Below, piece by piece: positions 15,673 to 33,852 of a DNA stretch of 63,932 bases. The first letter of the stretch is position 1, and each line of letters begins with the position of its first letter. The notes beneath the pieces are model-generated. The model saw only the letters and a program-made list of their open reading frames with translations, had not been told where the DNA came from and ran no database searches. The DNA is from Vitrella brassicaformis CCMP3155 (lineage: Eukaryota > Protista > Chromerida): contig CDMY01000275.1 in assembly GCA_001179505.1 (NCBI GenBank), positions 1 to 63,932 of the forward strand, read 5' to 3'. The position numbers and the translations under genes were made by a program.

Positions 15673-16877
15673 ATGGACCGCGAGCAGAGCACCCATTCGC
15701 CATCGCGGATGAATGCTCCTCGAGACTACCAGCTGTGGCTCTTTGACAGAGTCAAGAGGGACAACAGCATCGTCTTCATGCCAACAAACACAGGTATGCA
15801 AGGCCGCACTCAACGCCCTCTGCGGTAATTCGTGTGTATATGTGTGTGTGTGTGTGTGGATGGATGGATGTGTGTGTCTGCAGGGAAGACCCGCATAGCC
15901 ACGCTGCTGATCGACCACGTTCTGAATCAGCCTGAGTGCGCGTCCAATATCATCGTTTTTTTGGCGCCAACGTACGTCAAGAAGCACTCTACTCCTGAGC
16001 CCACTCATACGCACTCCATTCATTCGACTGTCAGGAAACCGCTGGGCGCCCAGCAGGAGGCCGTGATTGAGCTCGAGACCCGGGCAGGGCCCGTCCTCAT
16101 TCACGGCGATGTCCGCCTTGTGGGACCTGACTCAGGTAGCTACGAAGACACGCACAAACAAGACGGCGAGAAAGTGCGGCGTACACAGACAGTGGTAGTG
16201 TGTGCGCACATTCAGACAACTGGGACGATCCTTTGACGTGGGATCGACTCTTTTACGACTTGGAGGGCAACGCGGCGACGCCATTCACGTCTGTCGGAGT
16301 AGATCAGGACACCCTCAAGTCGTTCAGGACGTCGTGGATGGACGACGCGCAGCAGACCGCCGCTGCTGAAGACGCGTCGGATGTCTACAGCAGCGTGTGC
16401 GGGCCGCCCCGCGTATTCGTGATGACGCCCGCCAAGATGGTGGAGCTGCTGCATCCCGGCATGATTCGCCTGGATAGGGTGGCGCTGATGGTGCTGGATG
16501 AGTGCCACCACGTCAAGGGAGGCGACATGTACTCGTCCATCATGAGAAACTTCTACGATAGGGTGCCGGTGAGCAAACAGGGGGAAACCAAGGCAGATCC
16601 CAACCGGGACGTAAATATGATGGCGCATGTGTGTGTGTGTGTGCGTGTGTGTGTGCAGGTGAAAGATCGGCCACACATCCTCGGTCTGACTGCGTACCCA
16701 TCGAAAGGGAAGGCCAATGCATATGAGGCGATGGCCCAGGATGAGATCCATGCTATCGAAAGAGTGCTGTGCGCGCGACTGATCGTCCCACCAGCAGCCC
16801 TCTTGGAACCCTTCTGCCCCGTAACCAAAGCAAATGAAGATACTGCGTCGCACCAGAGTCCATCGAGTCTCTCTCCC

Positions 16878-16908
<31 letters not shown>

Positions 16909-19900
16909 TTCTCTGTGTGTGTGTGTGTGTGTGTGTGTCTTCAGTCCGTCACGGAGGAGCAGCTCAGATACGACGTGCCGCCCCCAGACAGCCATGCCGA
17001 CTGGCAATCCGTCCTCGACAACCAGCTGTGGGCACCCCTCTTCGCCACGGAGATCCCGGCTGCATTCGACAGACAGGACAAGGAGGCCCTTGCTCACCTC
17101 AATCCATCCCTGACGGCCGACCAGTGGATCGAGAAGGCCAAGGAGCACGTCACTAAACGCCTGGAGGGGGTGAAGGGAAACGTGTCGGTGGTGTTGACCG
17201 ATGTGGGTATCCGTGGGGTGGTGAATGGGCTGACGGTGGTGGCGCAGAAGGGCGGCATCATGGTGGCCGACGACGAGGACCAGAGCAGCGACGCAAGTGG
17301 CCCTGCGCGTAAGAAACAGAAGCTGCCCCCGGACGCAGGTGCCGATACAGACTGTGCTTTTCCCGTTATATGTGTAGAAGAGCTCTTCTTCTCTGGTGTA
17401 TGCAGGTGCGCCACCTGACCTGCTGCAGGAGATCTATCAGCTGCCACTGCAGCTCCTCACCACAGCCCTTCAACCAAGACCAACAGGCGCCGCTCTGGTC
17501 GCCCCACCCGATGCACCCGGCCCCTCGCCCGTCCTGAGCGATCACATGATGGACCTCCTCCTGACTCCCAAGGTCAAGCTGCTCCGCGAGACCATCCTAG
17601 ATGCACTTGAGCCGTTCAGAGTGGCCGGTGCTGGCGACTTCCAACTCTATGGTGACTCTGCCGGCTCGACAACGGCAATCCGCCACTACTCAGCTGCAGT
17701 GCACCAGCTGAAGGTGCTCGTGTTTGTAGAGCGGCGGCTTGCTGCTGTGGCTCTAAAGGCTGTGCTACAGGAGACCCTCCGAGGGCCGGATGGGAGGGGT
17801 CTGACTGTAGAGGTGGTCATGGGGACCAACGCCAGTGCGGCGGGCAACCCTGGCAAAGTGGAGTTTGATGGTACGCACGGAAGGGCGATACAGGGAGTGT
17901 GGGAGCCCTTCTTCGTGCGCCTGCCTGTGATGTGCAGCCAAGGCCCAGGACGCCATAATGGGTCGGTTTCGGGACACCACAGCAGCAGGCATACAAGTGC
18001 TGGTACGTACGGACACACGACCACAGGCAGGCAAACGGAAGATGAATCAATCGCTCGTGTGCGGTGCGCATGCGTGTCTGTCTCATCCCCTGGCTGTCCA
18101 GATCTCCACCAGCGTGTTAGAGGAGGGCATCGACGTCCCTCTCTGCAACTGTGTCGTCCGCTTCTCTCCCGTCGTCACCGGCAAGGAGAACGTCCAGTGC
18201 CGCGGCCGGGCGAGAAAGGCCGGCTCGCGCTACATCCACCTCATCCCCAACTCGCAAGACGGCATCGCAATCCGGCACCGACTGGCGAGCTATCAGCGAT
18301 TTGAGACGCTGCTGAGAGAACAGGCCAAGGCCAACCAAGAGGCGGCCATGAGAGGCGAGGGCGGAGCGGTGGGGGCTGGGAGGGCGGTGGAGAGTCCGTA
18401 TGTGACTGTGGATGACGTGGAGAGGGAGGCCGGTGTGCGGCCGCTCTTTGTGCCGGCGACGGGCGCTTATGTGCCGCCGGACAGGGGATTCGTCAAGGAC
18501 AAACTCTACAAGTGAGTGGACAGCTGACGGCTGACCTACAGCCATGCATCTCTGATTCTGTCTTTGCTCATGATGTAGGCTGTATCATGCGTACAATCCG
18601 CTGTCTGGCAAGTACGAGAGCGTCTACGGCATCATGGTCCTGGAGAAGGAGAAGGAGACCCTCTCCTACGACCCCTCCACACACACCGCCACACTCACCC
18701 TGCCCGCATTCAAGTAAGAGTGCAGACCCCCATGCGCCTCAGTGGCACAGCAGCAACAAGGGGCCAATGACGGCGACACCATGATTGTCACGCACACGGG
18801 GTGGAGGAGAGCTGTCGGCCGCCTGGGCGGGGAGGAGAGCCCCAAGGAGCTGAAGGAGAGGGTCATCATCGGGGTGTACATGCAGGCCCTGCAGACCCTA
18901 CACCAGGTGAGAGCGGGGGGAGATTGATGCGGTCGGTCGGTCGGTCGGTTCGTGTGTGTGGATGGGGTGGGATGCGTGTGTACGTATTTGTGTCAGATGG
19001 GTATCATAGACGACCACCTGATGCGATACGGCAGCATCGCACGCCAGCACTGGGAGAAGAAACGCAGGAAGTATGGCCAAGCCATCACTCTGCCACGAAA
19101 GGTACGTCGTAGACACGAAGGTCATCGAAACCCCATCCCATCTGCCTTTCATCCTTTCCGCCTCTCTCTCAGCCTCCGCTTTGCACATCGTGGCCTGATG
19201 GCATCCTCCCGCACCACTTCGCCCCCTCCCCACCCCCAGCCCCCTCCTCGCTCCCCTCTCTGCTGCTGCACACGCTGTCATTCTCGCCACCAGGCAGCCT
19301 GCTGCACTTCCCTGACTACGGCGGCCTCATGGGTCGCTACAGAATGGCGGATGGGGTGAAGCACAGGAGAATTGTCACGCCGGTGGGGATTGTGATGGCG
19401 GCTGGGCTCGTCGGGGGCGAGAGCATGGTGCTGGACGGGCTGTTCTACCCGATGAACAACGAGGCGTTTGGCGTGGAGGTGAGGCGAGAGGCCGAGGTCA
19501 GCGTCACGATAGAGTAAGCGCGGAAGCTGCAGGTGGGTGGGTGGGATGGTGGGCATGGATGTGTGCATCCGGATCGGTGCGTGGGTGTCATTGCAGGTGT
19601 GGACCAACAAGAGCTGCCGCCTTCTCGATGTCAAGAACTTCATCCATTGGGGGGGCCAGGGCCAGCAGCACCCGACCAACATCAACTCACTAATGGATGT
19701 CGACGCCTCAACCGACCGTGACCCCCATCTTCCCCCTTTCGCCTTTGCGGCCCCTCTCGACTCATCTGGCAAGGCCATCGACTGGCGATTCGTCGACGCA
19801 GCGCTGGAATACATCAACATGTAGGGAAAGAAGCTGCCGTGCGGGTGCTTTTTCTCTACACACACTGCGCCACGTGTGTTGTCATTCAGGTACGAGAGCC

Positions 19901-22296
19901 AGACGAGGCGTCAGGGGCGGATGGCCGTACCCAGCATGGTGGCGGTGAGGGCGGCGTCCCACGGGCCGGCAGCCGCCATGCTGGAGGCTCTGGGCTCACG
20001 CAATGGCGAGGAGCAGATGGCCCTGTCGCCTTCCAAGCGGACCAAAGCCCGGCGCTACAGATGGCACACGTGGGCGAGGAGGGAGGGAAGGAGAACGTCA
20101 GGAGGGATACATACCCATTTGTGTGTTGCTGCGTTGGGTGTGTTGGTGTCTGTCTGTCAGTGTGAGGGGCATTGTTGAGAACGAGAACGCATCCACTTTT
20201 GCTGTGGAGGATGGCCAGACGCTGCAGCAGTACTGCGCTCAATCATGGTAAGCCGGACGGACACACAGCCAGAGAGTGCCCGCGCTACACGGCTGCGCTG
20301 CAGTTGCGTGTTGTGTTTGTGCCTGTGAGCAGCAAGCACATGACTGAGCGCTTCGATGCACCGTTCCTCGTAGAGGCAGACCAATTCAGAGGGGTGGGTG
20401 TGGAGAGAAGAGACGCTCGCTCACTCATATCTGGTAATACTTGTGTTGTGTGGTTGCTGACAGGGCACTCGCAGTTTGTTGTATGAGGAGGAGAAGCTGC
20501 GCCCGACATCACAGCTGCGGAAGGACCGCTACCACCCACCAGAGCTGCTCAAACTCCTGCCACTTACCGCACCCATGGTATACACACCGAGAGAGAGAGG
20601 AAGATGGCGAGACGACTCTCCACCCATTGCTGCCTCTAATGTCTGCAGGCCGAATCGCTGACGTGGCTGCCCTCCCTCCTGTACCTGATAGAAGTGCAGC
20701 AGGCCATACAGGAGTTCCGCCACACCCTGCTCTCACGCCTCAACGACCGACTCAGCTCAGTCGACCAGACCCAGGCAGCGATCCATCTCGACTATGGCCG
20801 CCTCGTCGAGGCGTTGACGTGCCCCCTGCTCAACTCGCAGATTGGGGCGACCAAGGACGTCTTGGTCGACTGGCGGGCTCCCGCTGATCTGCGCCCGAGT
20901 GGGTGTCGGTCAGACTACCAACGACTAGAGGTGCGTGCAGCCGGCTGGCTGGCCTTCTGCTTGTGTTTGTGGTGGTGGTCACGTTGAGATGGCGTCTGTG
21001 TTGTCTTGAGTTGTGTTGAGTGCAGTGGTTGGGGGATGCCGTGCTGAAGTTCCTTGCCAACCTTGGCGCCTACCACGCGTGCGAGGGCCGCGGGGAGGGG
21101 CCCATGACGTCACTGTCCAGCCAGATGAAGGCCAACGAATACCTCCGCAAGTACGTGAGAGCACGGGAATCTTCGTGCTTGCGTGTGCGTGCATCTTTCC
21201 TGCATCCAGGATGTGCAAGGAGCACCGCTTCTACGAGTACACGTGGGCCCAGCCGTTCAGCCGCAGGCGGACAGTCGAGTCTACCCGAGCACAGACCATC
21301 GGCGACAAGACACTCGCCGACATTGTCGAATCCATCATGGGGGCCATCTACCTCTCCAACATACACCACGATGACACCAAGATAGAGGTGCGCACACCCC
21401 CACCCCCCCTCCACACACACAGAGAGAGAGCAGGTGTCGTATGGCTGCATGACTTGCAGGTCGATGATGTCGCTAACGATGCCCCTGACTACCAGCGGGG
21501 CGTAACAGCTGTAGCCGCCTTTGTCGACACCTTCCTCCACATGGACGACATGCCCTGCCTGCTGCCGCTGCTCTATGCGCCGACGGCCAACGATACGGCG
21601 ATGGCCAACGGTGCTGGGGAAGCGCGTGATTTGGGGCCGATCGAGGCCATGTGGGGGCGGCAGTTCCACGACCAAGGCCTGCTGAGGAAGGCGCTCACGA
21701 GCCGCTCGTGCGTTGGTGCGGGTGTGTCGAGTGCCGCCCAGACGAACGAGGAGCTAGAGTTCGTCGGCGATGCCGTGCTGGAGGTCCTCGTGTGCCATCA
21801 GATCTTCTTCGACGACACGCCGGCCGCCCCGTCGGCCGCCGGCGAGCTGATATCCGTCGACCCCCTAGATACGGAAGAAGGTACACCACCCATACAGGCA
21901 CACACATGACGACCATGGCAAGACGCCCTCTCTCATCGTGCCTGCCATGGTGAATGGGCGTCTGTAGGTCGCCTCACCGATCGAAAGAAGAGCTTGCTCT
22001 CCAACAGACACCTCTGCGAGCGGCTTCTGGCGCGCCTCCGTGACGCACCGTCCGGCCGTCTGTGCATCAGCGACGTGCTGAGGGTGGGCAATGCGGCGCA
22101 GCGTGATCATCTGAGGCAGCTGCAGATGGACTGGGAGGCGAGGAGGGAGGATTGGTCAGCGGGGCGTGAGGAGAGTGGCGTGAAGCATGTGGGGGACCTC
22201 TATGAGGCGCTGGTGGGCGCCACGTATGTCGATAGTGGCGGGGACCTGCTGGCCGTCTGGCGGGTGATAAGTCCCGACACTTGTGTGTGTAGATAG
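15673..22296 (+). CDS. DCL: Dicer-like protein: DExD/H helicase, dimerisation-like region, degenerate PAZ-like region, RNase IIIa + IIIb
   Basis: RDYQ, PTNTGKT, IIVFLAPT, VLDECHH, ILGLTA, VLVFVERR, STSVLEEGIDVPLCNCVVRF, VQCRGRAR. PAZ-like TLQQY...FLVE...PPELL. RNase IIIa YQRLEWLGDAVLKF...LADIVESIMGA; RNase IIIb NEELEFVGDAVLE...VGDLYEALVGATYVDSG. Confidence 0.95.
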
Positions 22297-23335: not shown

Positions 23336-24486
23336 CTATCGGCTGGGAACGTATGGGCAGTCGAATTGGAGGGCATAGTCGGAGCCGGGGAACACACAGA
23401 AATAGACGTACCCGGTGGCGTCGGGGTTCTCGCACACGCGGCACTCGTCATACACGCACCGCCCGCACGACAAGCAAACCTCCTCGTTGGGATACTGCTC
23501 ATCAACAGCCTCATCCGAGTCGTCGGGCGGCTCTGAAAGGATACACACACTCAACTCAGACACACACAGACAGAGCCACATGCTGCCTGTCTGTCTGTCT
23601 GTCTGGCCGTCTGTCTATCATCCGTGCGTGCAATCGATGAGGCCGACCTTCACAAGTGATCATCGTTCCCTGGGTGTCGTTTTTCTTGGCGCCGAGGGTG
23701 GACATGGCGGCGATGTCGAAAGGCATGACACACTCGGCGTTCCGGTAAGCCATCCACACCGACTGCATGCATCATTCATTCAACGATGAAAGAGTGGTCC
23801 CTCCCTCCCTTGCTGCTGGCTCACTCACCACATCGGCCGTCTTATTGTCGACCGCGGCAACCACGGCATGTGCGGCTCCGCCCGTTGACGCAGGCACCCT
23901 GACGACGCCGGACGAGTCGCTCGAACGCGAAACGAGCCTGCATGTCATGTGCGTTGCAAGGGGACATCCAGATGCTTGACAAGGTCTTTTCGCGCCTTAA
24001 TTATCCCCCTCCCCACCTACCCGTGCTCTCCTCTATACAGCACGGCCAAGTGCGCATTGTCCGATTTGGAGCTGACAGCCAACATCACCTCGTCAAAACC
24101 CGCAGCTCGCACGTCACCCTGCATGGACACACACACAGAGCGCATCGGTCAGACAGCCTCACCCACCCACAGCCACACCCACCGTACTGTACCAGATTGA
24201 CGTTGATGTACTGTTCGCTCTGCGCCGGGACAGGTCGGGTGGGCAGCGAGGCGAAATGGACCAGCCTGTCCTTCGGAGGCGGCTTATCCATCAACATAGG
24301 CGCCGTGAACACCGGGCACAGCTGTCGCCCTTTCGAGGACTTTTTGTCAGTGTCATGGCGCGTCTGCGCAAGCAGCTTCTGCACGTCTTCCAGCACTTCC
24401 TCGAGCCTTGTGGTTACCGCCTCGCAATGTGTCGGACTGCCGAAAGCAGCGAGGAGAAAGAGGGGAAACAGGAAGGCCTTCATCAT
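23336..24486 (-). CDS. Putative secreted protein with Cys-rich C-terminus
   Basis: N-terminal hydrophobic signal MMKAFLFPLFLLAAFGSPTHCEA; GT/AG-bounded exons; last exon ...EEVCLSCGRCVYDECRVCENPDATGYVYFCVFPGSDYALQFDCPYVPSR*. Confidence 0.6.
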
Positions 24487-25060
24487 CTCGGCCGTTAGAA
24501 AACCCGCAGTTTACATACCTCATTGTAAATTGCCTGTGTTGAGCATGGATGGTTGACAGTACACACGCAAGGAGAGAGAGAGCATCGTGCATGTCTGCAC
24601 AGATGGATGGATGATCACACACATGCAAGCCATGTTTGAAGTGAAGTGATCATGGTGGCAGGCAGGCAGGAGGGAGGTAGTGGGATGGACAGCACCCACA
24701 CTTCCTTCCGTCCCCCGCCTTCCTGGCTCTCGCTGCCGTCCGTGTCTGCGTGGCTGGCTGCATGTGCGCTAGCCGTCTTCCTCCATCCCCCTCCCTACCT
24801 CCCTCCCCTCCCTCTCTCCCTCCCTCTCTCTCTCAATCTCTCAATCTCTCCCTCTCTCTGTCTAACGAATTGCTGCCCTTGCCTTGGCTGCTGGCTATTG
24901 GCAATGAATGACACACACGTGTGTCATGGAGCTACAACAATCAGACAGACTGAGTATGTACAACCATACAAACAGACGGCATCACCCAGCATCCCATCAA
25001 CCACCCAACCGCCCCCCCCTTCCCCGTCTGTCTGTCTGTCTATCGCATCCGCTCGCTAGT

Positions 25061-28000
25061 CTACAAGTAAAAATTGGTGCAATTGAGGTGCTTGTGGGGC
25101 TTGTCCCACTTCAACGCGCCACTGATGTACTGCAACAACCTAACACACACACACACACACACGCGCGCACGCACGAGTCCATCGTGTAATGCACTCAGTG
25201 TGTTGGCTCTTAGCATGCCCACTTCTCTGCCATCTTGACGGGAGCCGGCACCTTGATGCCCTCATCCCGCTCTGACACACACAGACATCCACATAAACAC
25301 ATGGACACACACGTGGTGTGTGTGGCGATTCGTTCTTGCTACTGCACTGACTGTGGAAGTTCTGATAGCTCATCGTCAGCAGGTGCGTGTAGATGTACAG
25401 GTTGGGCACTGACACGCCTGCAGCACACACACAGCTGCAGACAGACATGGTGGGCGTCGCCCTCCCTCTTTTGGCCCTTTCCCCGCCCACACACCGGTGT
25501 TGTTGTACAGCACGTGGTAGAGCGTTGGTGTGGGGCACGAGCCAGGGGGGGCTCGGCCGTGGTAGAAGTAGAAGTCCCACACGTCCCTCGACGTCACACC
25601 CGAATCCACCACAGTACCTGCACACACAGACAGGCAGACACACAGACAAACGGATCCATCCACACACTCATGCAGTCATCCCTCCCGCGCACCCACCTGG
25701 CTGGACGCTGCCGTCGCCTCTTCGATAGGCGTCGTGCGACCGCTTCCCGCCGTTCCCCCCATACCCGCCCCCATTCCCACCATTGCCGCGCCCATACCCG
25801 CCCCCATAGCGGCCGCCGCGGTCGGTGGGTCGCGCCGGCGACGCGTGCGACGAGGGGTAGGTGGACGGCAGGGAGGGGGTCGTCTGGGTGCTCGTGGCGG
25901 GCGGCACGTCGCCGCCGCGGGGACGCACATCACGGGGCTCCGACACATGAGTGGTGAATCTGACAGAGAAGGAGAGATTATTCACGTGTCGTACGCCGAT
26001 GGTTCGTTCTTTCGTCTGCACGTACCGCATCGTGACGTGTTTGTTGACAAAGATGAACGCGACGGTGGGGCGAGGGAACTCGTTGAGGTCCTTGGTGTGG
26101 GGCGTGAGCTTGGCGGTCGTGAGGGCCGCCTCCTCGTCCTTGCCCTGACTGATGAGGCCGGCGAACTTGTTCTTGCGCGCAGTGAGGGCCTCGTTGGCCT
26201 TGGCGAGGGCCTCGTTGATGCCCTCAAACACGCCGGGCAGCTCGAAACGCACACACGTAACTTTCTGACCCTCAGACACCCCTACACATAAAACACACAC
26301 AACACATACACACACAATGAGCGGCTGGCTGGATGGCTGCCTTGCTCAGTGGCCCACCGCTGCGATAAATGAGGATCTGGTCGGGGAGCTCCGAGTGAGT
26401 GATGAAATACTTCTTGCATGCGGCTGAAGAACCACAAGAGCATCAAGGGGCGTGTGTGTGTGGCATGTGGCGATCTGCTCTGCCCTGCTCACCGGTGAAG
26501 GACTCCTTGACTTTTGTCCAGTCGACGGCCGTGGCCTGAGCGCTCTCGAAGAAGTCCACCTGCATACGTAACACACCACACACAGCAAAGGGTGAAAGGA
26601 CCAGGCCAGCGAATGTGTCAATGTGTGTGTGGCTGAGAGATGAGCGGATGGGTACCCGTGACAGGTATCTCGTGTATTTCTCGTTGAAGGACGCCGTGAA
26701 GACCATGCAGATCTGCCACTTGCCGTGTACTGCACCACACCACACACACACACACACACCCCATTCCCTCTCCCCCGTGTGTACTTGTGCGACTGTCTGA
26801 GTGTGTACCTTTGCGCCTGATGGTGTCGATGCCGCAGACCATGGTCTTCTTGCGGCCCTCCACACCGTCTGGGCCGAAATCGGGGTGCCGATCAGCCACC
26901 TTGACGTGATACGAGTAGCCACTCATCTATATGTGCACAGACACAGACAGACAGACGTATGAGTGACACATTTGGTACATCCATCTCTGTGTGTGTGGGT
27001 GTGTGGGTGGGTGGCTGACCTTGTTGCGGATTTTGTCGATGACCTTCGCCTCGGCCACTCCCCATTTCTTCTGCACCGTACTCGCCTTCAAGCACTGATG
27101 ATCATACTCCACACAAACACATGGATGTGTGCGCGTCTGTCTGGTGTCCTGTGTGTCGTCCCATCCCCTCTATCTACCTGGCTGGCACACACTATGGAGT
27201 CTTGTGTCGAGTGGAGGCTGAAGGCCTGCTTGATCTTGGCCCGGTCCTCCCCCACTGCATCCTTCGAGCGACCGCCACTACAGACACACACACACACACA
27301 CATACATGGCCGCATTAATGTGGTGTGATGGCGTGTTCGGTTCGGTGGGGGGGGGGGGCGTACCTGTCGTCGAGTATCCACACGATGCACGTGATGCCGC
27401 CGTTGAACTCGCGCACACGCTCAGCCGCCTGCCGCAGGTCGGTGTCCGTCACGCCTCGCTCGTGACTCGCCAAATCCACCGTGTAAACTGGGTTGAACCT
27501 GACACACACACAGACACACAGGTGTATGTGAGCATGTCGATAGCAGGCACACGTGTGTGTCGAGGGAGGGAGGGGCGTGTGGTACTCACGGACGGCCCGT
27601 CTGATCGGTGTGTTCGTCGAGCAGACCAAAGCCTGCAATCAACCAAACAAACAAACAAACATACACCCATACTCAGACACCAAGCTCGCAGGAACATCAT
27701 GCTCCTCTGGTGAGGGGGTCCCTCTCTGCTTACGTTTGCCCTTGGTCATGAGGGAGTCGACCAGTCGGCGTCGGAGGTCCGTGTGGCGGCCCTTGCACAC
27801 GAACAGCGCCCTGTTGAACTTCACTGTTTGCTGCTCGTCATCCTGGATACACACACACACACACACACATACACATATGTTGAATGAATGACACTCCTGC
27901 GGCGCTGCGGTGACCTCCAGGTTCTCGGTGGAATAGCCGCTGAACAGGCTGCTCGATATTTGGGAGGCTTCTACTTCTACGGCACTCGGCATCTGAACAA

Positions 28001-30514
28001 CAGATACACACACACACACACACACATATCTGTCTGAGTGTGTTCTATGCGTGTCTGTATGTCTGTCTGTGTATGGTACCATCTGCAGATGGAACTGTCT
28101 GAGGATCTTCTTCTCGCGCTCCACCTTGTCCAGCGCGCCCAGTAGGTCCTCATACATGCGGAAACGCCGATCTGCAAACAAGATACACCTGAAGGCTCTG
28201 TGTGCGTGTGTGTGTGTGTGTCGGTTTATGTGTGGTACCTGGGGGAAGTCGGCAGTAGTTGTGGACGAGCTGCATCTTCTGCCGGTTGCTCTTGGTCTCA
28301 TCATCCAGCCCTGCACACACACGGGTCATACGCACATAAGCAGACCAACACACTTCCCCCGACGGCCGTCTGTGTTGGTGTGTCGCACGTTTCTGACCTG
28401 TCAGGTAGCACAGCGTGGTGGGGATGAATATCTCCTTGCCGTTGCGAATGCTCTTGACAAATGGCTGTCTGCTCGGGGACAGGTACTTGTCCGCCGACAC
28501 GCCACGGAGACGGCTGTAGTGCTGCACACACAGGTACACGAACAGACATGCGAAGAGGGCTATGTGTGTTCTTTTGTGTGTTGCGCGACAGCTGACCTGG
28601 CTAAAGTAGTCAAAGAACGTGACGAAGTCGTTCGTGCGGTTGTTCATGAAGCCATCTTTCTTCAGATCTTTCTCAACCAACTGCAAATCACCCGTCACAC
28701 ACGCACACACACACACACAGACACACACACACACACACACAGAGGTGGGAGAAACATATGGATGCACGCGGCCTCCTTCTCGCTTCTCACTCCGTCGATG
28801 CGATACCACTGGTCCGCATGGTCTGACATCACCCACAGAGAGAGAGAGAGAGAAGCGACACATACATGAAAGCAGCGTGTCGTGTGTATGCGGCGTGTTC
28901 GGCTGTGTGTCTTACATGTGACCACGCCACGCCCCTCATACAACTCGCCGAGCACGGCCAGGTTGGCGGCCTTCGACGAGCTACCTGCACACACATGGAC
29001 GGCAACGGACAAGAAACCGTGTGTGGCCTCTCTCTCTCTCTCCCTGTGTGTGTGTGTGTGTGTGTGTATGTGTGCGTGTGGGATGTGAGCTGACGCATTG
29101 CAGCCTGCAGTATCTCGTAGACCGGGGCCTCCTTGATGCAGATGTGCTTCACATCAAGCTGAACACCAACACACACCAACACACACACACGTGTCTGTGG
29201 TGCCCTCCCTCCCTCCCTCCCTGTTTCCCTCACTCCCCCGCCCGCCACCCCACCTGCAGCACGGGTCCTCTCATGGTGGCGATGGTGGTGAGGATCATGC
29301 CTCGGCACACGCGGATGGAGTGCTGGTCCGGGGTGCTGCGCTCCGGCTTGAGAGTGCACACGGGGGCTGCAAAGTCGAAGTACACCCCTCTCACACCGCA
29401 ACGCTGAACCAGACCATCACCACCACGCCATCACAACCACAGATACATGCCATGCAGCGCATACGTGTTATGGTGTCGTGTTCACCTTTGACTTGCGCGC
29501 CAGGGCCTTGAACAGGTTGTCGAGGTACATACGGCCCTCCTGGCTCCTCATCACACCGAAATCAGCTGCACAGCACACCCACAAAGAGAGAGAAGAGAGG
29601 GACCAAAGACGCACACGTTCGTCGAGGTGTGTTTGTGTGGTGCGTGTGGTTTGGTGGGTTACGTACGGCAGAAAGACTTACCAACGTCGAGTTTCTTGAC
29701 GCGCGTGAATGTGAACTCGTACTCGACGTCCATCTCATCGCTACGCATCGCGGGCTTCTGCAGGACACACCGAGAGAGGGAGGGAGGTGAATGCGTCATG
29801 TGTGCGTGTTTCCCTCCTTTCATCCCTCGTGTACGTACGAGTTTGAGTGTGGCGGTAACCTCGAGCTGCTGGCCGGGAATGGCGGCTGCGATGAGCTGGC
29901 GGCCGGTGGGCACGATGTACTGGCTCTTCAACGCCTGCTCCACCTGAGAAAGCCATCCATCCATCCATCCATTACAGAGAGAGAGAGAGAGAACCATTAC
30001 AGAGAGAGAGCGGTGACACACACACACACACACACGCGCGTAAAATAACAGAGAGGAGGGATGGTGCATCCATCACCTTCTTGGCGCTGCGAGCGACGGC
30101 CGTCCGCATCTGGAAGGAAACCTCCTGAATGAGAACAAATAGTACGCACTTGCGCTCCTGACCTTCGCCAGACACAAGCCACTTACTTTCTCGTTGTACG
30201 CGTCGAGATCCTCGGCCTTGACGTCGTACAACACCCACTCCGCTCCATGGCACTGCTGGAGCTCGAAACAGTTGCTTTTGAGCCTCACCTGCACACACTC
30301 AGACAGGAGGAGCACAGATTCCAAAGAAACGGCCTCTCTGCAGATGAATCTCTCGTGCCTTAGCGAAGTTCTGGCGGTTTGACACATGTGCAGGCTGCTG
30401 CGGTGCACCAGGTGCACTTGCAGGGAAGCCTGCGACGCTCTCTGGCGGTGGAGGGACGGCGCCGGCGGGGTCAGCAGCAGCAACCGCGCTCGAGGACGGC
30501 TGCTGGAAACTCAT
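25061..30514 (-). CDS. Argonaute/PIWI-family protein (PIWI-like C-terminus), many exons
   Basis: N-domain VRLKSNCF...LYDV. PAZ-like VTFFDYF...YLSP.RQPF...IFIPTTLCYLTG. MID IKQAF/HQCL/KIRNKMSG. PIWI MVCGID, ASFNEKYTRYLSR, ILIYRSGVSEGQ, FIFVNKH, PGTVVDSGVT, DFYF, PTLYHVLY, IKVPAPVKMAEK; C-terminus ...HLNCTNFYL* (TAG 25061-25063). Confidence 0.95.
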
Positions 30515-30987
30515 CAGTGAGGAGATATCTGGGGAGCAAATATCAGGCTGCGCAATTCTCTGTATTTGAGACTGCGAGCTAAGCGTGCAAGCGCGAAGAA
30601 GGTAACAGCATCGATTGTGGTGTATCCTCGCGTTGGCGGTGCCCCAAGCGTCGGGAACCAGTTCTCCGTCAGAATCTCGAGTCTACTGCGCCCACACGAT
30701 GGATGAAACGCTCCCCCATTTGTGTGAAACGTCGTGGGGGGAAGAGCTGCGGCAGTATGATGAAAAACGACTGTAAGCGGCGCACAAAGGATGCGCACAA
30801 GTGACACTTCATGTGATTTTGCTGTGTTCGCTTGCCTCAATGCAGTGCATGCTCCGACGAGTTCTTCCAGGGGAGGCAAGAGAAGTTCAGCCACGGTAGG
30901 CGCCACGATGGATGAACACGCCGGGGCTTGACCGGGCTGCTCTGCTTGGTGTCTTCAGCTCACATCAAGGCACGTGAGCAGGTGTTC

Positions 30988-31287
30988 NNNNNNNNNNNNN
31001 NNNNNNNNNNNNNNNNNNNNNNNNNNNNNNNNNNNNNNNNNNNNNNNNNNNNNNNNNNNNNNNNNNNNNNNNNNNNNNNNNNNNNNNNNNNNNNNNNNNN
31101 NNNNNNNNNNNNNNNNNNNNNNNNNNNNNNNNNNNNNNNNNNNNNNNNNNNNNNNNNNNNNNNNNNNNNNNNNNNNNNNNNNNNNNNNNNNNNNNNNNNN
31201 NNNNNNNNNNNNNNNNNNNNNNNNNNNNNNNNNNNNNNNNNNNNNNNNNNNNNNNNNNNNNNNNNNNNNNNNNNNNNNNNNNNNNNN
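30988..31287. other. Assembly gap (300 N)
   Basis: N run. Further 300-N gaps at 48032-48331, 52090-52389 and 60934-61233; the identical size indicates placeholder lengths. Confidence 1.
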
Positions 31288-32149
31288 CTTTCGCAGCCGC
31301 GCGTGTGACACAACACTGTGTGTGTGTGTGTGTATGTGTGTGGGTGTGGGTGTGGGTGTGGGTGCAGGTATGACCAGGCCATCAGTCCTGATTACTTGTG
31401 GGAGGTGCAGCAGGGCATCAACGACGCCTGCATCGGGGCCAGAAGGAACCAGCAGGACTTCATTCCTTTCGTCTCAAGTACGTGAGCCGAATGGCATGCG
31501 CACACACGTGTGCCCGCCTGACTGAGCGCTCTCCTTCTGTTGTCTTGTCTTTTCCCCGCCAGACGACAACTATATGCGAGCCTGCCAGTCGTCATCATCC
31601 GTCTGCACCAGCTTCGACAACTTCGACGAATATAAAGTCAGCAACACCGAACATCCACACACACACACACACACACACGCGCAGGGATATCTGGGGAGCA
31701 AATATCAGGCTGCGCAATTCTCTGTATTTGAGACTGCGAGCTAAGCGTGCAAGCGCGAAGAAGGTAACAGCATCGATTGTGGTGTATCCTCGCGTTGGCG
31801 GTGCCCCAAGCGTCGGGAACCAGTTCTCCGTCAGAATCTCGAGTCTACTGCGCCCACACGATGGATGAAACGCTCCCCCATTTGTGTGAAACGTCGTGGG
31901 GGGAAGAGCTGCGGCAGTATGATGAAAAACGACTGTAAGCGGCGCACAAAGGATGCGCACAAGTGACACTTCATGTGATTTTGCTGTGTTCGCTTGCCTC
32001 AATGCAGTGCATGCTCCGACGAGTTCTTCCAGGGGAGGCAAGAGAAGTTCAGCCACGGTAGGCGCCACGATGGATGAACACGCCGGGGCTTGACCGGGCT
32101 GCTCTGCTTGGTGTCTTCAGCTCACATCAAGGCACGTGAGCAGGTGTTC
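31288..32149. repeat. Gap-adjacent duplicated sequence: 31288-31687 copies 45969-46362; 31686-32149 copies 30524-30987
   Basis: Near-identical text by eye. One substitution (tgcacca vs tgcgcca) and microsatellite length differences in the first block. Confidence 0.9.
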
Positions 32150-33852
32150 AATCCGCTGCTTCAGCTGTACAGAGACCCAAATCAGGTGGATGACGATAGT
32201 CACTGACGTGACTGACCAGAAAAATGCATGGGGGCCGTTCCTATGTATGTGTTCAGGAGGAAGAGAGTAGGATGAGTGAGATGGCCCGCACTCTGCAATC
32301 TCTCAACGCTGCTCGAGACAAGCAGCTCATGGAGGAAACCACGTAATAATAAGCGGAGGTGGTGACTGGGCGGCGATTGATTGATGTCTATCTGTTCATC
32401 TCGTGTTGGTCGTTGGCTGCAGGTACAATGTGGTGACGAACGAGGAACGTCTACCGCCAGGCAAGGACCATCTCAGCACCATTCCGGTACGCCGCGTGCA
32501 GTGATGGGCAGCCAGGGCGTTCATCATTCATGTCTGTCTGCTTCTTGTCTCCATTCTGTCAACAGAAAGACATGGCAGGATTAGCGGGTCGAAAGAGTCG
32601 CCGGCCTGACAAACCACGGATGACAAGAGGCGCTGACGCCCCGCCTCGCTTCCTCAACACATTCGCTGACTTCAACATTGTGACCAACCGGCCGCACGAC
32701 GAACACAACACCTCTCTGGCCATGACGGGCTGCAGGCCACGTCCATCCGACCCGATAAAGGAGCCTAGGGCCAAGCTCATACCTCCCTTCAACATCAGGG
32801 ATTTCAATATCGTCAACAACAAGTACTACGCCCACAACGAGGAGAAAGAGCGGGTAAGTGAGGGGATGCTCGTCCCGTCCAGACATGCTTCCACTGGTCG
32901 GCCTTTCTGCCATGCATTTCAGATGGAGAAGACAATTTCGCTTCTTGAGGCGACGAAAAAATTCCGCAAGACCAACAGGTAAAAGGCTGATGACTAACCG
33001 ACTCGGTGATATGACTGGTAATGAGCTGCGAGTGTTTTCAGGTTCGATCCCCTCTTGGGCGTCTTCAACGAGAGAGACGAAGAAAGAAGGGCTAGAAGGT
33101 GATATGCATAGAGATTATGCCATGCTCGTCGTCCACTTGATCACACATTTGTCCTCAGGATTGAGATGGAGGTTACGTGCAGTGCCCCGCTGCGACAAGC
33201 GGAGGGAAGACCAGACTTCATGCTCTTCAGGTCCGACGACACCGGCGAGATTTTCATCCTCACTGGATGTGTCTGTATGACTGACCGTCAGGGAATCGGA
33301 GCACTACGATATGATTGGACACAGGGCCTTCAATTTAGACCTGCTCGCAGATGTCGATGAAGCGCTGCGGGCAAGAAAAGCCAGGTGAGACGTATACATG
33401 GGAGCACGGAATGGATGGATACCCGCTCGAATCGGATGACACGACGTCGTTTTCCAGGTTTTCAATGCGACACAACGTCGATGCGTCCCGCTCGGTGCGT
33501 GGATGGCTTGACAAAAGAGACGCCAGTGAGAAACAGAGCATGTATGTCGCGTTCAGGCCACTGAGGGCGAGAGGACAGCCAAGATTGAGGCGAGGCAGAT
33601 ACATCGCGCATCACCTGAGCGCTTCAAGGCTCAGCTGGACAGGTATTTGTACGAGATTCTCTATCCCACCAGCTGTACTGCCCTGATCCATCTACTCCAT
33701 GCGTGTCTGCGCGCAGAGGTCATGACATTCTTACGAATGAGCCCTACTTGGGCAGGTACGGTCGCTGCATAGCTAAGCCGCGTGTGTACTATAACACGAG
33801 GCCGACGGCGTGGCAGAGACTCGCCAAGACATCGCTTGCATCAGCGTGCTGA
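31920..33852 (+). CDS. Hypothetical protein with repeated [FY]NI[VL][TN]N motifs (flagellar/ciliary-associated type); 5' end uncertain
   Basis: Exons: HIKAREQVFNPLLQLYRDP, SLNAARDKQL, YNVVTNE, DFNIVTNRP, RDFNIVNNKY, FDPLLGVF, RGHDILTNEPY, RPTAWQRL. The functional guess is inference. Confidence 0.6.

What the first reader, a model, noticed from the sequence alone, without database searches (positions are those of the whole stretch)
25061..26900. Argonaute catalytic tetrad is degenerate: D-A-S-E instead of D-E-D-H
Seen after splicing: the first Asp is kept (MVCGID). The Glu-finger position reads SAQA. The RDG motif reads YRSGVSEGQ (AGC at 26359-26361, across an intron). The final His position reads PAPVKMAEK (GAG at 25225-25227). 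Known: slicing needs DEDX. Inference: a non-slicing Argonaute that silences by recruiting effectors (chromatin, translation or a separate nuclease). The alignments were made by eye.
Basis: partly seen in the sequence, partly recalled or inferred. Interest (0 to 1): 0.7.

Follow-up and report, generated by a model that had tools for sequence, protein, structure and literature searches.

The report
Slicer-dead Piwi gene, mostly mis-spliced
This gene of the alga Vitrella brassicaformis encodes a very divergent Piwi-type Argonaute that has lost three of its four RNA-cutting residues, and its main assembled transcript is also spliced out of frame before the protein's end, so it is an ordinary, possibly decaying, member of the known non-cutting Argonautes.

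Summary
The minus-strand gene at 25061-30514 has 30 exons. It is the annotated 984-aa "Piwi domain-containing protein" of Vitrella brassicaformis CCMP3155 (P0001). Pfam finds PAZ and Piwi domains, and the best solved relatives are PIWI-clade proteins (MILI, E 2.7e-24).

Alignments give this tetrad:
- D632 is kept.
- The Glu finger is A671 (T672 in one alignment).
- The second Asp is S706 (YRSGVSEGQ).
- The His is E958 (PAPVKMAEK).

Spliced RNA contigs from three runs in two studies confirm the exon structure, including the RSG junction, and show no base differences. No splicing restores RDG or AH.

New here: those contigs use an exon-28 acceptor at 25434, 17 nt upstream of the annotated 25417. 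That shifts the frame and stops at codon 940 (TGA 25378-25376). The assembled mRNA therefore never reads PAPVKMAEK or the C-terminal ...NFYL.

The "non-slicing" inference is well supported. "Silences by recruiting effectors" is untested. The locus may be mostly unproductive or decaying.

No close relative was found. The scan has already noted many Piwi paralogues with broken tetrads elsewhere in this genome, so this is a new member of a known kind and of low interest.

The parts
25061..30514 (-). Whole coding region of the Piwi-type Argonaute gene. It has 30 exons and 29 short introns of 62-133 nt. All are GT-AG except intron 1, which is GC-AG. Annotated product is P0001, 984 aa.
   Evidence: Hand model and translation. 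Identity with P0001. Record CDMY01000275.1 of GCA_001179505.1. Spliced contig of 3267 nt in run X7, whose coordinates fit the exon sums exactly.
28239..28984 (-). Exons 9-13, which encode the PAZ domain (about residues 277-379).
   Evidence: Pfam PF02170 scores 35 bits against a cut-off of 28.8. The region aligns to MILI and to the PIWIL1 PAZ structure 2xfm.
26825..26827 (-). GAC codon of D632, the first catalytic Asp, kept (MVCGID).
   Evidence: Aligned with GMD/GID of MILI, EfPiwi and PIWIL1.
26530..26535 (-). Codons of A671 (GCC) and T672 (ACG), the Glu-finger position, where no acidic residue sits.
   Evidence: The QE of EfPiwi and lizard PIWIL1 aligns with Q670-A671. The MILI alignment puts its Glu on T672.
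26359..26361 (-). AGC codon of S706, which replaces the third catalytic residue (Asp) in YRSGVSEGQ. It lies at the end of exon 24.
   Evidence: Sequence. YRDGVSDGQ of MILI aligns column for column. The exon 22-24 lengths are confirmed by X1 contig coordinates, and no other letters are seen in RNA or DNA runs.
25225..25227 (-). GAG codon of E958, which replaces the fourth catalytic residue (His) in PAPVKMAEK. It is in frame only in the annotated isoform.
   Evidence: VPAPCKYAHKL of MILI aligns with VPAPVKMAEKL. The frame problem is shown.
25418..25434 (-). 17 nt that the RNA contigs include in exon 28. The RNA acceptor AG is at 25436-25435 and the annotated acceptor AG at 25419-25418. Inclusion shifts the frame.
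   Evidence: The joint 25434/25495 appears in X1, X2 and X7. The predicted mRNA length is 3072 nt with this acceptor, which equals the X7 contig coordinate, against 3055 with the annotated one.
25376..25378 (-). Premature TGA of the assembled mRNA isoform, at codon 940. The product would end ...LYHVLYNNT plus 19 foreign residues.
   Evidence: Translation of the RNA-supported exon set.
25697..25959 (-). Exon 26, an 86-residue insertion rich in Gly, Arg, Ser and Pro (residues 793-878, with RGG/GGY repeats) inside the PIWI domain.
   Evidence: It is a gap against PIWIL1. Composition is given. The whole exon is present in the spliced contig of X7.
26097..26213 (-). A ~39-residue insertion in exon 25 (about residues 730-768), absent from PIWIL1 and predicted helical.
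   Evidence: It is a gap in the alignment. It is the only region with pLDDT 70-88 in an otherwise poor AF2 model.
27020..27180 (-). Exon 20 and the end of exon 19. These hold Q573 (CAG 27180-27178) and K598 (AAG 27022-27020), two kept residues of the 5'-phosphate pocket.
   Evidence: SQC and KM.G are invariant against PIWIL1. The Tyr/Lys pair of the pocket could not be placed with confidence.
30357..30358 (-). GC donor of intron 1. Exon 1 runs to 30359, 27 nt beyond the GT I first chose.
   Evidence: The X7 contig piece covers 30358-30553 and the record arithmetic fits. P0001 carries the 9 extra residues.

Best explanation
This is a real, transcribed and very divergent PIWI-clade Argonaute paralogue of Vitrella brassicaformis. 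It cannot cut RNA by the canonical two-metal mechanism, because three of the four slicer residues are replaced (D632, A671/T672, S706, E958). Its 30-exon frame is intact, and it keeps recognisable PAZ and PIWI domains and a Piwi-type C-terminus. By inference, it therefore served for a long time as a non-slicing small-RNA-binding protein. In the cultures sampled, the assembled mRNA uses an acceptor 17 nt upstream in intron 27. The frame then breaks, translation would stop at codon 940, and the last 64 residues of the PIWI domain are lost, including the C-terminal end that Piwi proteins use in the 5'-phosphate pocket. The locus is therefore mostly unproductive. It is either in early decay or kept at low dose through a minor in-frame isoform. 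Shown here: the residues, the splicing and the frame shift. Inferred: loss of slicing, past function, and present decay or low dose.
For: Gene model and motifs. Identity with the annotated protein P0001 of V. brassicaformis. Pfam Piwi scores 93 bits and PAZ 35 bits, both above cut-off. PDB relatives are PIWI-clade at E 1e-24 to 1e-12, against AGO2 at about 1e-4. Residue-level alignments for all four positions. The third residue is a catalytic residue at the two-metal site, and its D-to-A mutant was used to obtain an uncleaved guide-target structure of AtAGO10 (PMC10772731, read). Spliced contigs in X1, X2 and X7 (two studies) reproduce the exon sums, show no base differences, and carry the 25434/25495 joint. 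The X7 contig coordinate of 3072 fits only the longer exon 28 and gives a stop at codon 940. The ESM Atlas's own model of the full-length protein has pTM 0.77 and TM 0.70-0.72 to Aubergine/PIWIL1 clusters.
Against: Contigs show only the dominant variant, so an in-frame isoform using 25417 could exist at an unknown level. Exons 28-30 keep an open, Piwi-like frame (VPAP..., ...NFYL), which argues that the in-frame isoform is, or was until recently, under selection. No slicer assay exists. E958 could still bind metal, and E667 sits on the same loop as the missing Glu finger. The runs are only guessed to be RNA in their records. Their spliced contigs are the evidence that they are.
Confidence: 0.6

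Rival explanations
1. It is a fully functional non-slicing Argonaute. A minor or condition-specific in-frame isoform (acceptor 25417) yields the 984-aa protein. That protein binds small RNAs and silences by recruiting partners, and the frame-shifted isoform is regulated unproductive splicing.
For: The 984-codon frame is intact across 30 exons with good splice sites. The annotated-frame C-terminus is conserved. Q573 and K598 of the 5' pocket are kept. The gene is expressed in two studies. A Dicer-like gene lies next door. Upstream AGs in introns 1, 2, 13 and 19 are skipped, so the choice of AG is not simply 'first come'.
Against: All three RNA runs assembled only the frame-shifted junction. The Tyr/Lys of the 5' pocket could not be found. 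No orthologue or close paralogue was found that would show constraint. Partners and small RNAs are untested.
Confidence: 0.3
2. It is a non-canonical nuclease. The changed site (Asp, Ser, Glu, plus E667 on the finger loop) still binds metal and cleaves, so the protein is a slicer with an unusual active site.
For: Two acidic residues remain at tetrad positions, D632 and E958. DEDD tetrads with an acidic fourth residue are known in prokaryotic Argonautes (PMC10772731). E667 lies 4 residues before the finger position.
Against: The third-position Asp is a core catalytic residue at the two-metal site in all known slicers, and here it is Ser. No alignment puts an acidic residue at the finger. E958 is out of frame in the assembled mRNA.
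Confidence: 0.04
3. It is an annotation or assembly artefact. The degenerate motifs would come from wrong exon choices or sequencing errors, and the true protein would have DEDH.
For: There is an assembly gap with a 464-nt perfect duplicate just upstream of the gene.
Against: Independent DNA contigs (X3) match the window without differences over 25096-27840. RNA contigs confirm the exons that carry S706 and D632. The codons lie inside exons, not at ambiguous junctions.
Confidence: 0.02

Closest known systems
Animal PIWI-clade Argonautes (mouse MILI/PIWIL2, PIWIL1, Ephydatia Piwi-A, Drosophila Piwi, Bombyx Siwi)
   Same: Same PAZ and PIWI domains and the best sequence matches (E 2.7e-24 to 7e-12). 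It shares the motif frames GxD, YR.GVS.GQ and VPAP..A.KL and a C-terminal ...YL. The fold of the Atlas model is closest to Aubergine/PIWIL1 clusters.
   Different: About 23-26% identity only. The tetrad reads D-A/T-S-E instead of D-E-D-H. There are two insertions in the PIWI domain, of about 39 and 86 residues. There are no N-terminal RG repeats. The Tyr/Lys of the 5' pocket are not identifiable. The host is a photosynthetic alveolate, not an animal.
Naturally slicer-deficient Argonautes (human AGO1 and AGO4 are my own knowledge; C. elegans WAGOs likewise; Drosophila Piwi acts without needing slicing, per the abstract and topic of PMC7015924)
   Same: Argonaute scaffold with non-catalytic residues at tetrad positions, expected to act by binding rather than cutting.
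   Different: Those proteins are demonstrably produced and loaded with small RNAs. Here three positions are changed at once, and the main mRNA isoform cannot encode the end of the PIWI domain.
Other Piwi paralogues of the same genome noted by this scan (for example s1-199308, s1-199337, s1-212143)
   Same: Same genome and the same kind of claim, a PIWI-clade gene with a broken tetrad. One followed-up copy was judged slicer-dead and decaying.
   Different: They lie on other contigs and I could not fetch their sequences. This copy has no detectable close paralogue in exon 25. Its damage is at the level of splicing, not a genomic frame break.

Membership tests
Argonaute/PIWI superfamily | PIWI (RNase H-like) domain | tested here: met
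   Pfam PF02171 scores 93 bits, E 2.7e-26, against a cut-off of 28.9. Exon 27 alone gives a weak hit to profile positions 218-255.
Argonaute/PIWI superfamily | PAZ domain | tested here: met
   Pfam PF02170 scores 35 bits against a cut-off of 28.8. The region aligns to the PIWIL1 PAZ structure 2xfm.
Argonaute/PIWI superfamily | Bilobed N-PAZ-MID-PIWI fold | tested here: inconclusive
   The ESM Atlas's own model has pTM 0.77 and TM 0.70-0.72 over about 740-770 residues to Aubergine/PIWIL1 clusters. My own AF2 model failed (pLDDT 34).
PIWI clade (as opposed to AGO clade) | Closer to PIWI than to AGO proteins, ideally shown by phylogeny | tested here: inconclusive
   Best-hit evidence only. PIWI structures score E 1e-24 to 1e-12 and AGO2 about 1e-4. 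The C-terminal ...FYL is Piwi-like. No tree was possible, because only one homologue could be fetched.
Slicer-competent Argonaute | Catalytic tetrad D-E-D-H/D | tested here: not met
   The positions read D632, A671/T672, S706 and E958. No RNA or DNA variant restores them.
Guide-binding Argonaute | 5'-phosphate pocket Y-K-Q-K in MID/PIWI, plus the free C-terminus | tested here: inconclusive
   Q573 and K598 are kept. The Tyr/Lys pair falls on K556/S560 in the MAFFT alignment, or on R552/K556 if shifted. The C-terminus is missing from the assembled mRNA isoform.
piRNA-type pathway | Loaded small RNAs, 2'-O-methylated 3' ends, Tudor partners | not testable with these tools
   No small-RNA data or partner information is available here.

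The most novel reading that the evidence does not exclude
The 86-residue RGG/GGY-rich exon inserted in the PIWI domain would be a docking or condensate-forming module. It would stand in for the N-terminal arginine-rich Tudor-binding tails of animal Piwis. The gene would then be a purpose-built, slicing-independent scaffold, and its dose would be set by a regulated choice between two acceptors 17 nt apart (productive against frame-shifted).
Probability: 0.08. Interest if true: 0.5.

Novelty: new member of a known kind. Interest (0 to 1): 0.22.

Why it matters
Non-slicing Argonautes are common, and the scan has already noted many broken-tetrad Piwi paralogues in this genome, so the finding adds one more case. 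Its modest value has two parts. It documents Piwi-clade genes, next to a Dicer-like gene, in a free-living photosynthetic relative of apicomplexans. It also warns that the annotated 984-aa protein rests on an acceptor that the assembled transcripts do not use. Catalogues of 'intact' RNAi genes in chromerids should be checked against RNA.

Tried and rejected
- **Exon-by-exon scans.** Exons of 21-87 residues are too short. Only exon 27 touched Piwi (E 0.12) and Drosophila Piwi (E 0.48). The rest gave chance hits (DUF6376, engineered proteins, aminoglycoside nucleotidyltransferase).
- **No typed or joined model went to any search tool.** Whole-protein searches used the database's own record P0001, which the exon-25 search returned. 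Exons were joined only inside local scripts, to translate them and compare them with P0001.
- **Word-index homologue searches.** These were swamped by low-complexity words or fell below threshold. They returned only the protein itself and one lizard PIWIL1. No phylogeny, dN/dS or deep alignment was therefore possible.
- **AF2 with the 2-sequence alignment.** It gave pLDDT 34, so I made no fold search on it.
- **Literature searches for Argonaute, Piwi or Dicer in Vitrella, Chromera or chromerids.** None found a relevant paper.
- **E667 as a displaced Glu finger.** I considered and rejected this. It aligns with a non-catalytic Glu of EfPiwi, and it would not compensate for S706.
- **The low-complexity exon 26 as an unrecognised intron.** I considered and rejected this. 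It is fully present in the spliced contig.

Full report
**What is there**

Reading the minus strand of 24500-32500 gives a gene of 30 short exons from ATG 30514 to TAG 25063-25061. My hand model has every junction at a canonical site.

I searched it exon by exon by reference. The exons are too short for significance. Only exon 27 (25496-25615) touched Pfam Piwi (E 0.12, profile positions 218-255) and Drosophila Piwi 6kr6 (E 0.48).

A full HMMER scan of 1.84 billion representatives with exon 25 (26028-26279) returned one protein, P0001 (984 aa, 100% identical over the exon). P0001 is the annotated product of this locus: an "unnamed protein product" of Vitrella brassicaformis CCMP3155, called "Piwi domain-containing protein" in UniRef. 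It lies on CDMY01000275.1 of GCA_001179505.1, and window coordinates equal record coordinates. It equals my model except that exon 1 runs 27 nt further, to a GC donor. No typed or joined model was sent to any search tool. Joined exons were used only in local scripts.

**Family**

- Pfam scores P0001 at 93 bits for Piwi and 35 bits for PAZ, both above the curated cut-offs.
- Against solved structures the best matches are all PIWI-clade: MILI 2.7e-24, EfPiwi 8e-23, PIWIL1 5e-23, Drosophila Piwi 2e-17 and Siwi 7e-12. Human AGO2 reaches only about 1e-4.
- The ESM Atlas holds the sequence with a model of pTM 0.77. Its nearest structural clusters are Aubergine/PIWIL1, at TM 0.70-0.72.
- My own AF2 run with a two-sequence alignment failed (pLDDT 34), so I made no fold search on it.
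- The protein has no close relative that I could find. The exon-25 scan hit only itself. Three word-index searches returned only itself and one lizard PIWIL1 at 23% identity (P0002).

**The tetrad**

| Position | Canonical residue | Here | Evidence |
|---|---|---|---|
| 1 | Asp | D632 (GID; GAC 26827-26825) | aligns with GMD/GID |
| 2 | Glu finger | A671, or T672 in one alignment | see below |
| 3 | Asp | S706 (AGC 26361-26359) | YRSGVSEGQ aligns with YRDGVSDGQ |
| 4 | His | E958 (GAG 25227-25225) | VPAPVKMAEKL aligns with VPAPCKYAHKL |

The alignments are the HMMER alignments to MILI and EfPiwi and the MAFFT alignment to PIWIL1. For the Glu finger, the QE of EfPiwi and PIWIL1 aligns with Q670-A671, and the MILI alignment places its Glu on T672. 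D675 matches the conserved Asp four residues later. E667 aligns with a non-catalytic Glu of EfPiwi.

The Glu finger is critical for cleavage (PMC10772731). Loss of canonical slicing is therefore a safe inference.

In the MID/PIWI 5' pocket, Q573 and K598 are kept. The Tyr/Lys pair cannot be placed with confidence.

**Transcripts**

One run search found eight holders. I laid four of them on 25000-30600.

- X3 holds unspliced genomic contigs with no differences from the window.
- X1, X2 and X7 (two studies) hold spliced contigs, so they are RNA or cDNA.
- The 3267-nt X7 contig runs from 30553 to 25000.
- The record coordinates of its pieces, and of the 1701-nt X1 contig, reproduce my exon lengths block by block. 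This includes exons 22-24 (207 nt), which carry the Glu-finger position and S706. It also includes all of exon 26, the low-complexity exon.
- No other letters, insertions or deletions are reported, so neither editing nor splicing restores RDG or AH.

There are two departures from the hand model. The first is the GC donor of intron 1. The second is more important. The joint 25434/25495 appears in all three RNA runs, so exon 28 starts 17 nt upstream of the annotated acceptor (25417).

With this acceptor the predicted length from 30553 to 25000 is 3072 nt, which is exactly the X7 contig coordinate. With the annotated acceptor it would be 3055 nt. The 17 nt shift the frame. Translation reads ...LYHVLYNNT, then 19 foreign residues, and stops at TGA 25378-25376 (codon 940). 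The assembled mRNA thus never encodes residues 921-984, including E958 and the terminal ...NFYL.

Contigs keep only the dominant variant, so an in-frame minor isoform cannot be excluded. Twenty-four of the 29 introns have no AG in their last 30 nt. Intron 27 is one of five that do. In the other four the upstream AG is skipped.

**Interpretation**

The protein is very divergent. Three catalytic positions are replaced and it carries two lineage-specific insertions: about 39 residues in exon 25, and the 86-residue Gly/Arg/Ser/Pro-rich exon 26. Yet it keeps a 984-codon frame over 30 exons. Together these argue that it persisted for a long time as a non-slicing Argonaute.

The frame-shifted main transcript argues that the locus is now mostly unproductive. 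It is either in early decay or held at low dose. The still-open, Piwi-like frame of exons 28-30 means the change is recent, or that the in-frame isoform is still used.

My rough odds for the three readings:

| Reading | Probability |
|---|---|
| Slicer-dead and mostly unproductive | about 0.6 |
| Functional non-slicer via a minor isoform | about 0.3 |
| Unusual active nuclease, or an artefact | a few per cent together |

**Context and novelty**

A Dicer-like pair of gene models lies convergent to this gene: a helicase at 15673-18717 and a double RNase III at 18781-22296, both on the plus strand.

The scan's earlier notes list many other Piwi paralogues with broken tetrads in this genome. One followed-up copy was judged slicer-dead and decaying. 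I could not check those notes, because the sequences are not in reach. The library holds no paper on chromerid Argonautes.

Non-slicing Argonautes are a known kind, so this is a new member of it and of low interest. The practical point is that the annotated protein relies on an acceptor that the assembled transcripts do not use.

Noticed in passing
window 15673-22296 (+): Two adjacent annotated gene models lie tail-to-tail with the Piwi gene. One is a 765-aa helicase (DEAD/ResIII faint, Helicase_C). The other is an 851-aa protein with two Ribonuclease_3 domains. Together they look like one Dicer-like gene split by the annotation.
   Followed up: partly
window 30524-30987 and 31686-32149, flanking the N run 30988-31287: A 464-nt, 100% identical direct duplicate lies around an assembly gap, starting 10 nt upstream of the Piwi start codon. 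It is probably a gap-closing artefact. The 5' UTR seen in RNA (up to 30553) lies inside it, so the promoter region is uncertain.
   Followed up: partly
window 25960-26025 (-): Intron 25 is 66 nt, in frame and free of stops, so retaining it would add 22 residues without breaking the frame. The RNA contigs splice it out.
   Followed up: yes
window 30357-30358 (-): Intron 1 uses a GC-AG pair, while all the other 28 introns are GT-AG.
   Followed up: yes
window 25000-30500, most introns: Nearly every intron carries a (GT)n/(CA)n or (GTCT)n microsatellite just upstream of the acceptor. These repeats attract many unrelated contigs in the run data, which gives depth spikes and false joints.
   Followed up: no
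window 23336-24486 (-): An annotated 270-aa gene without any Pfam hit lies between the Dicer-like gene and the Piwi gene.
   Followed up: no
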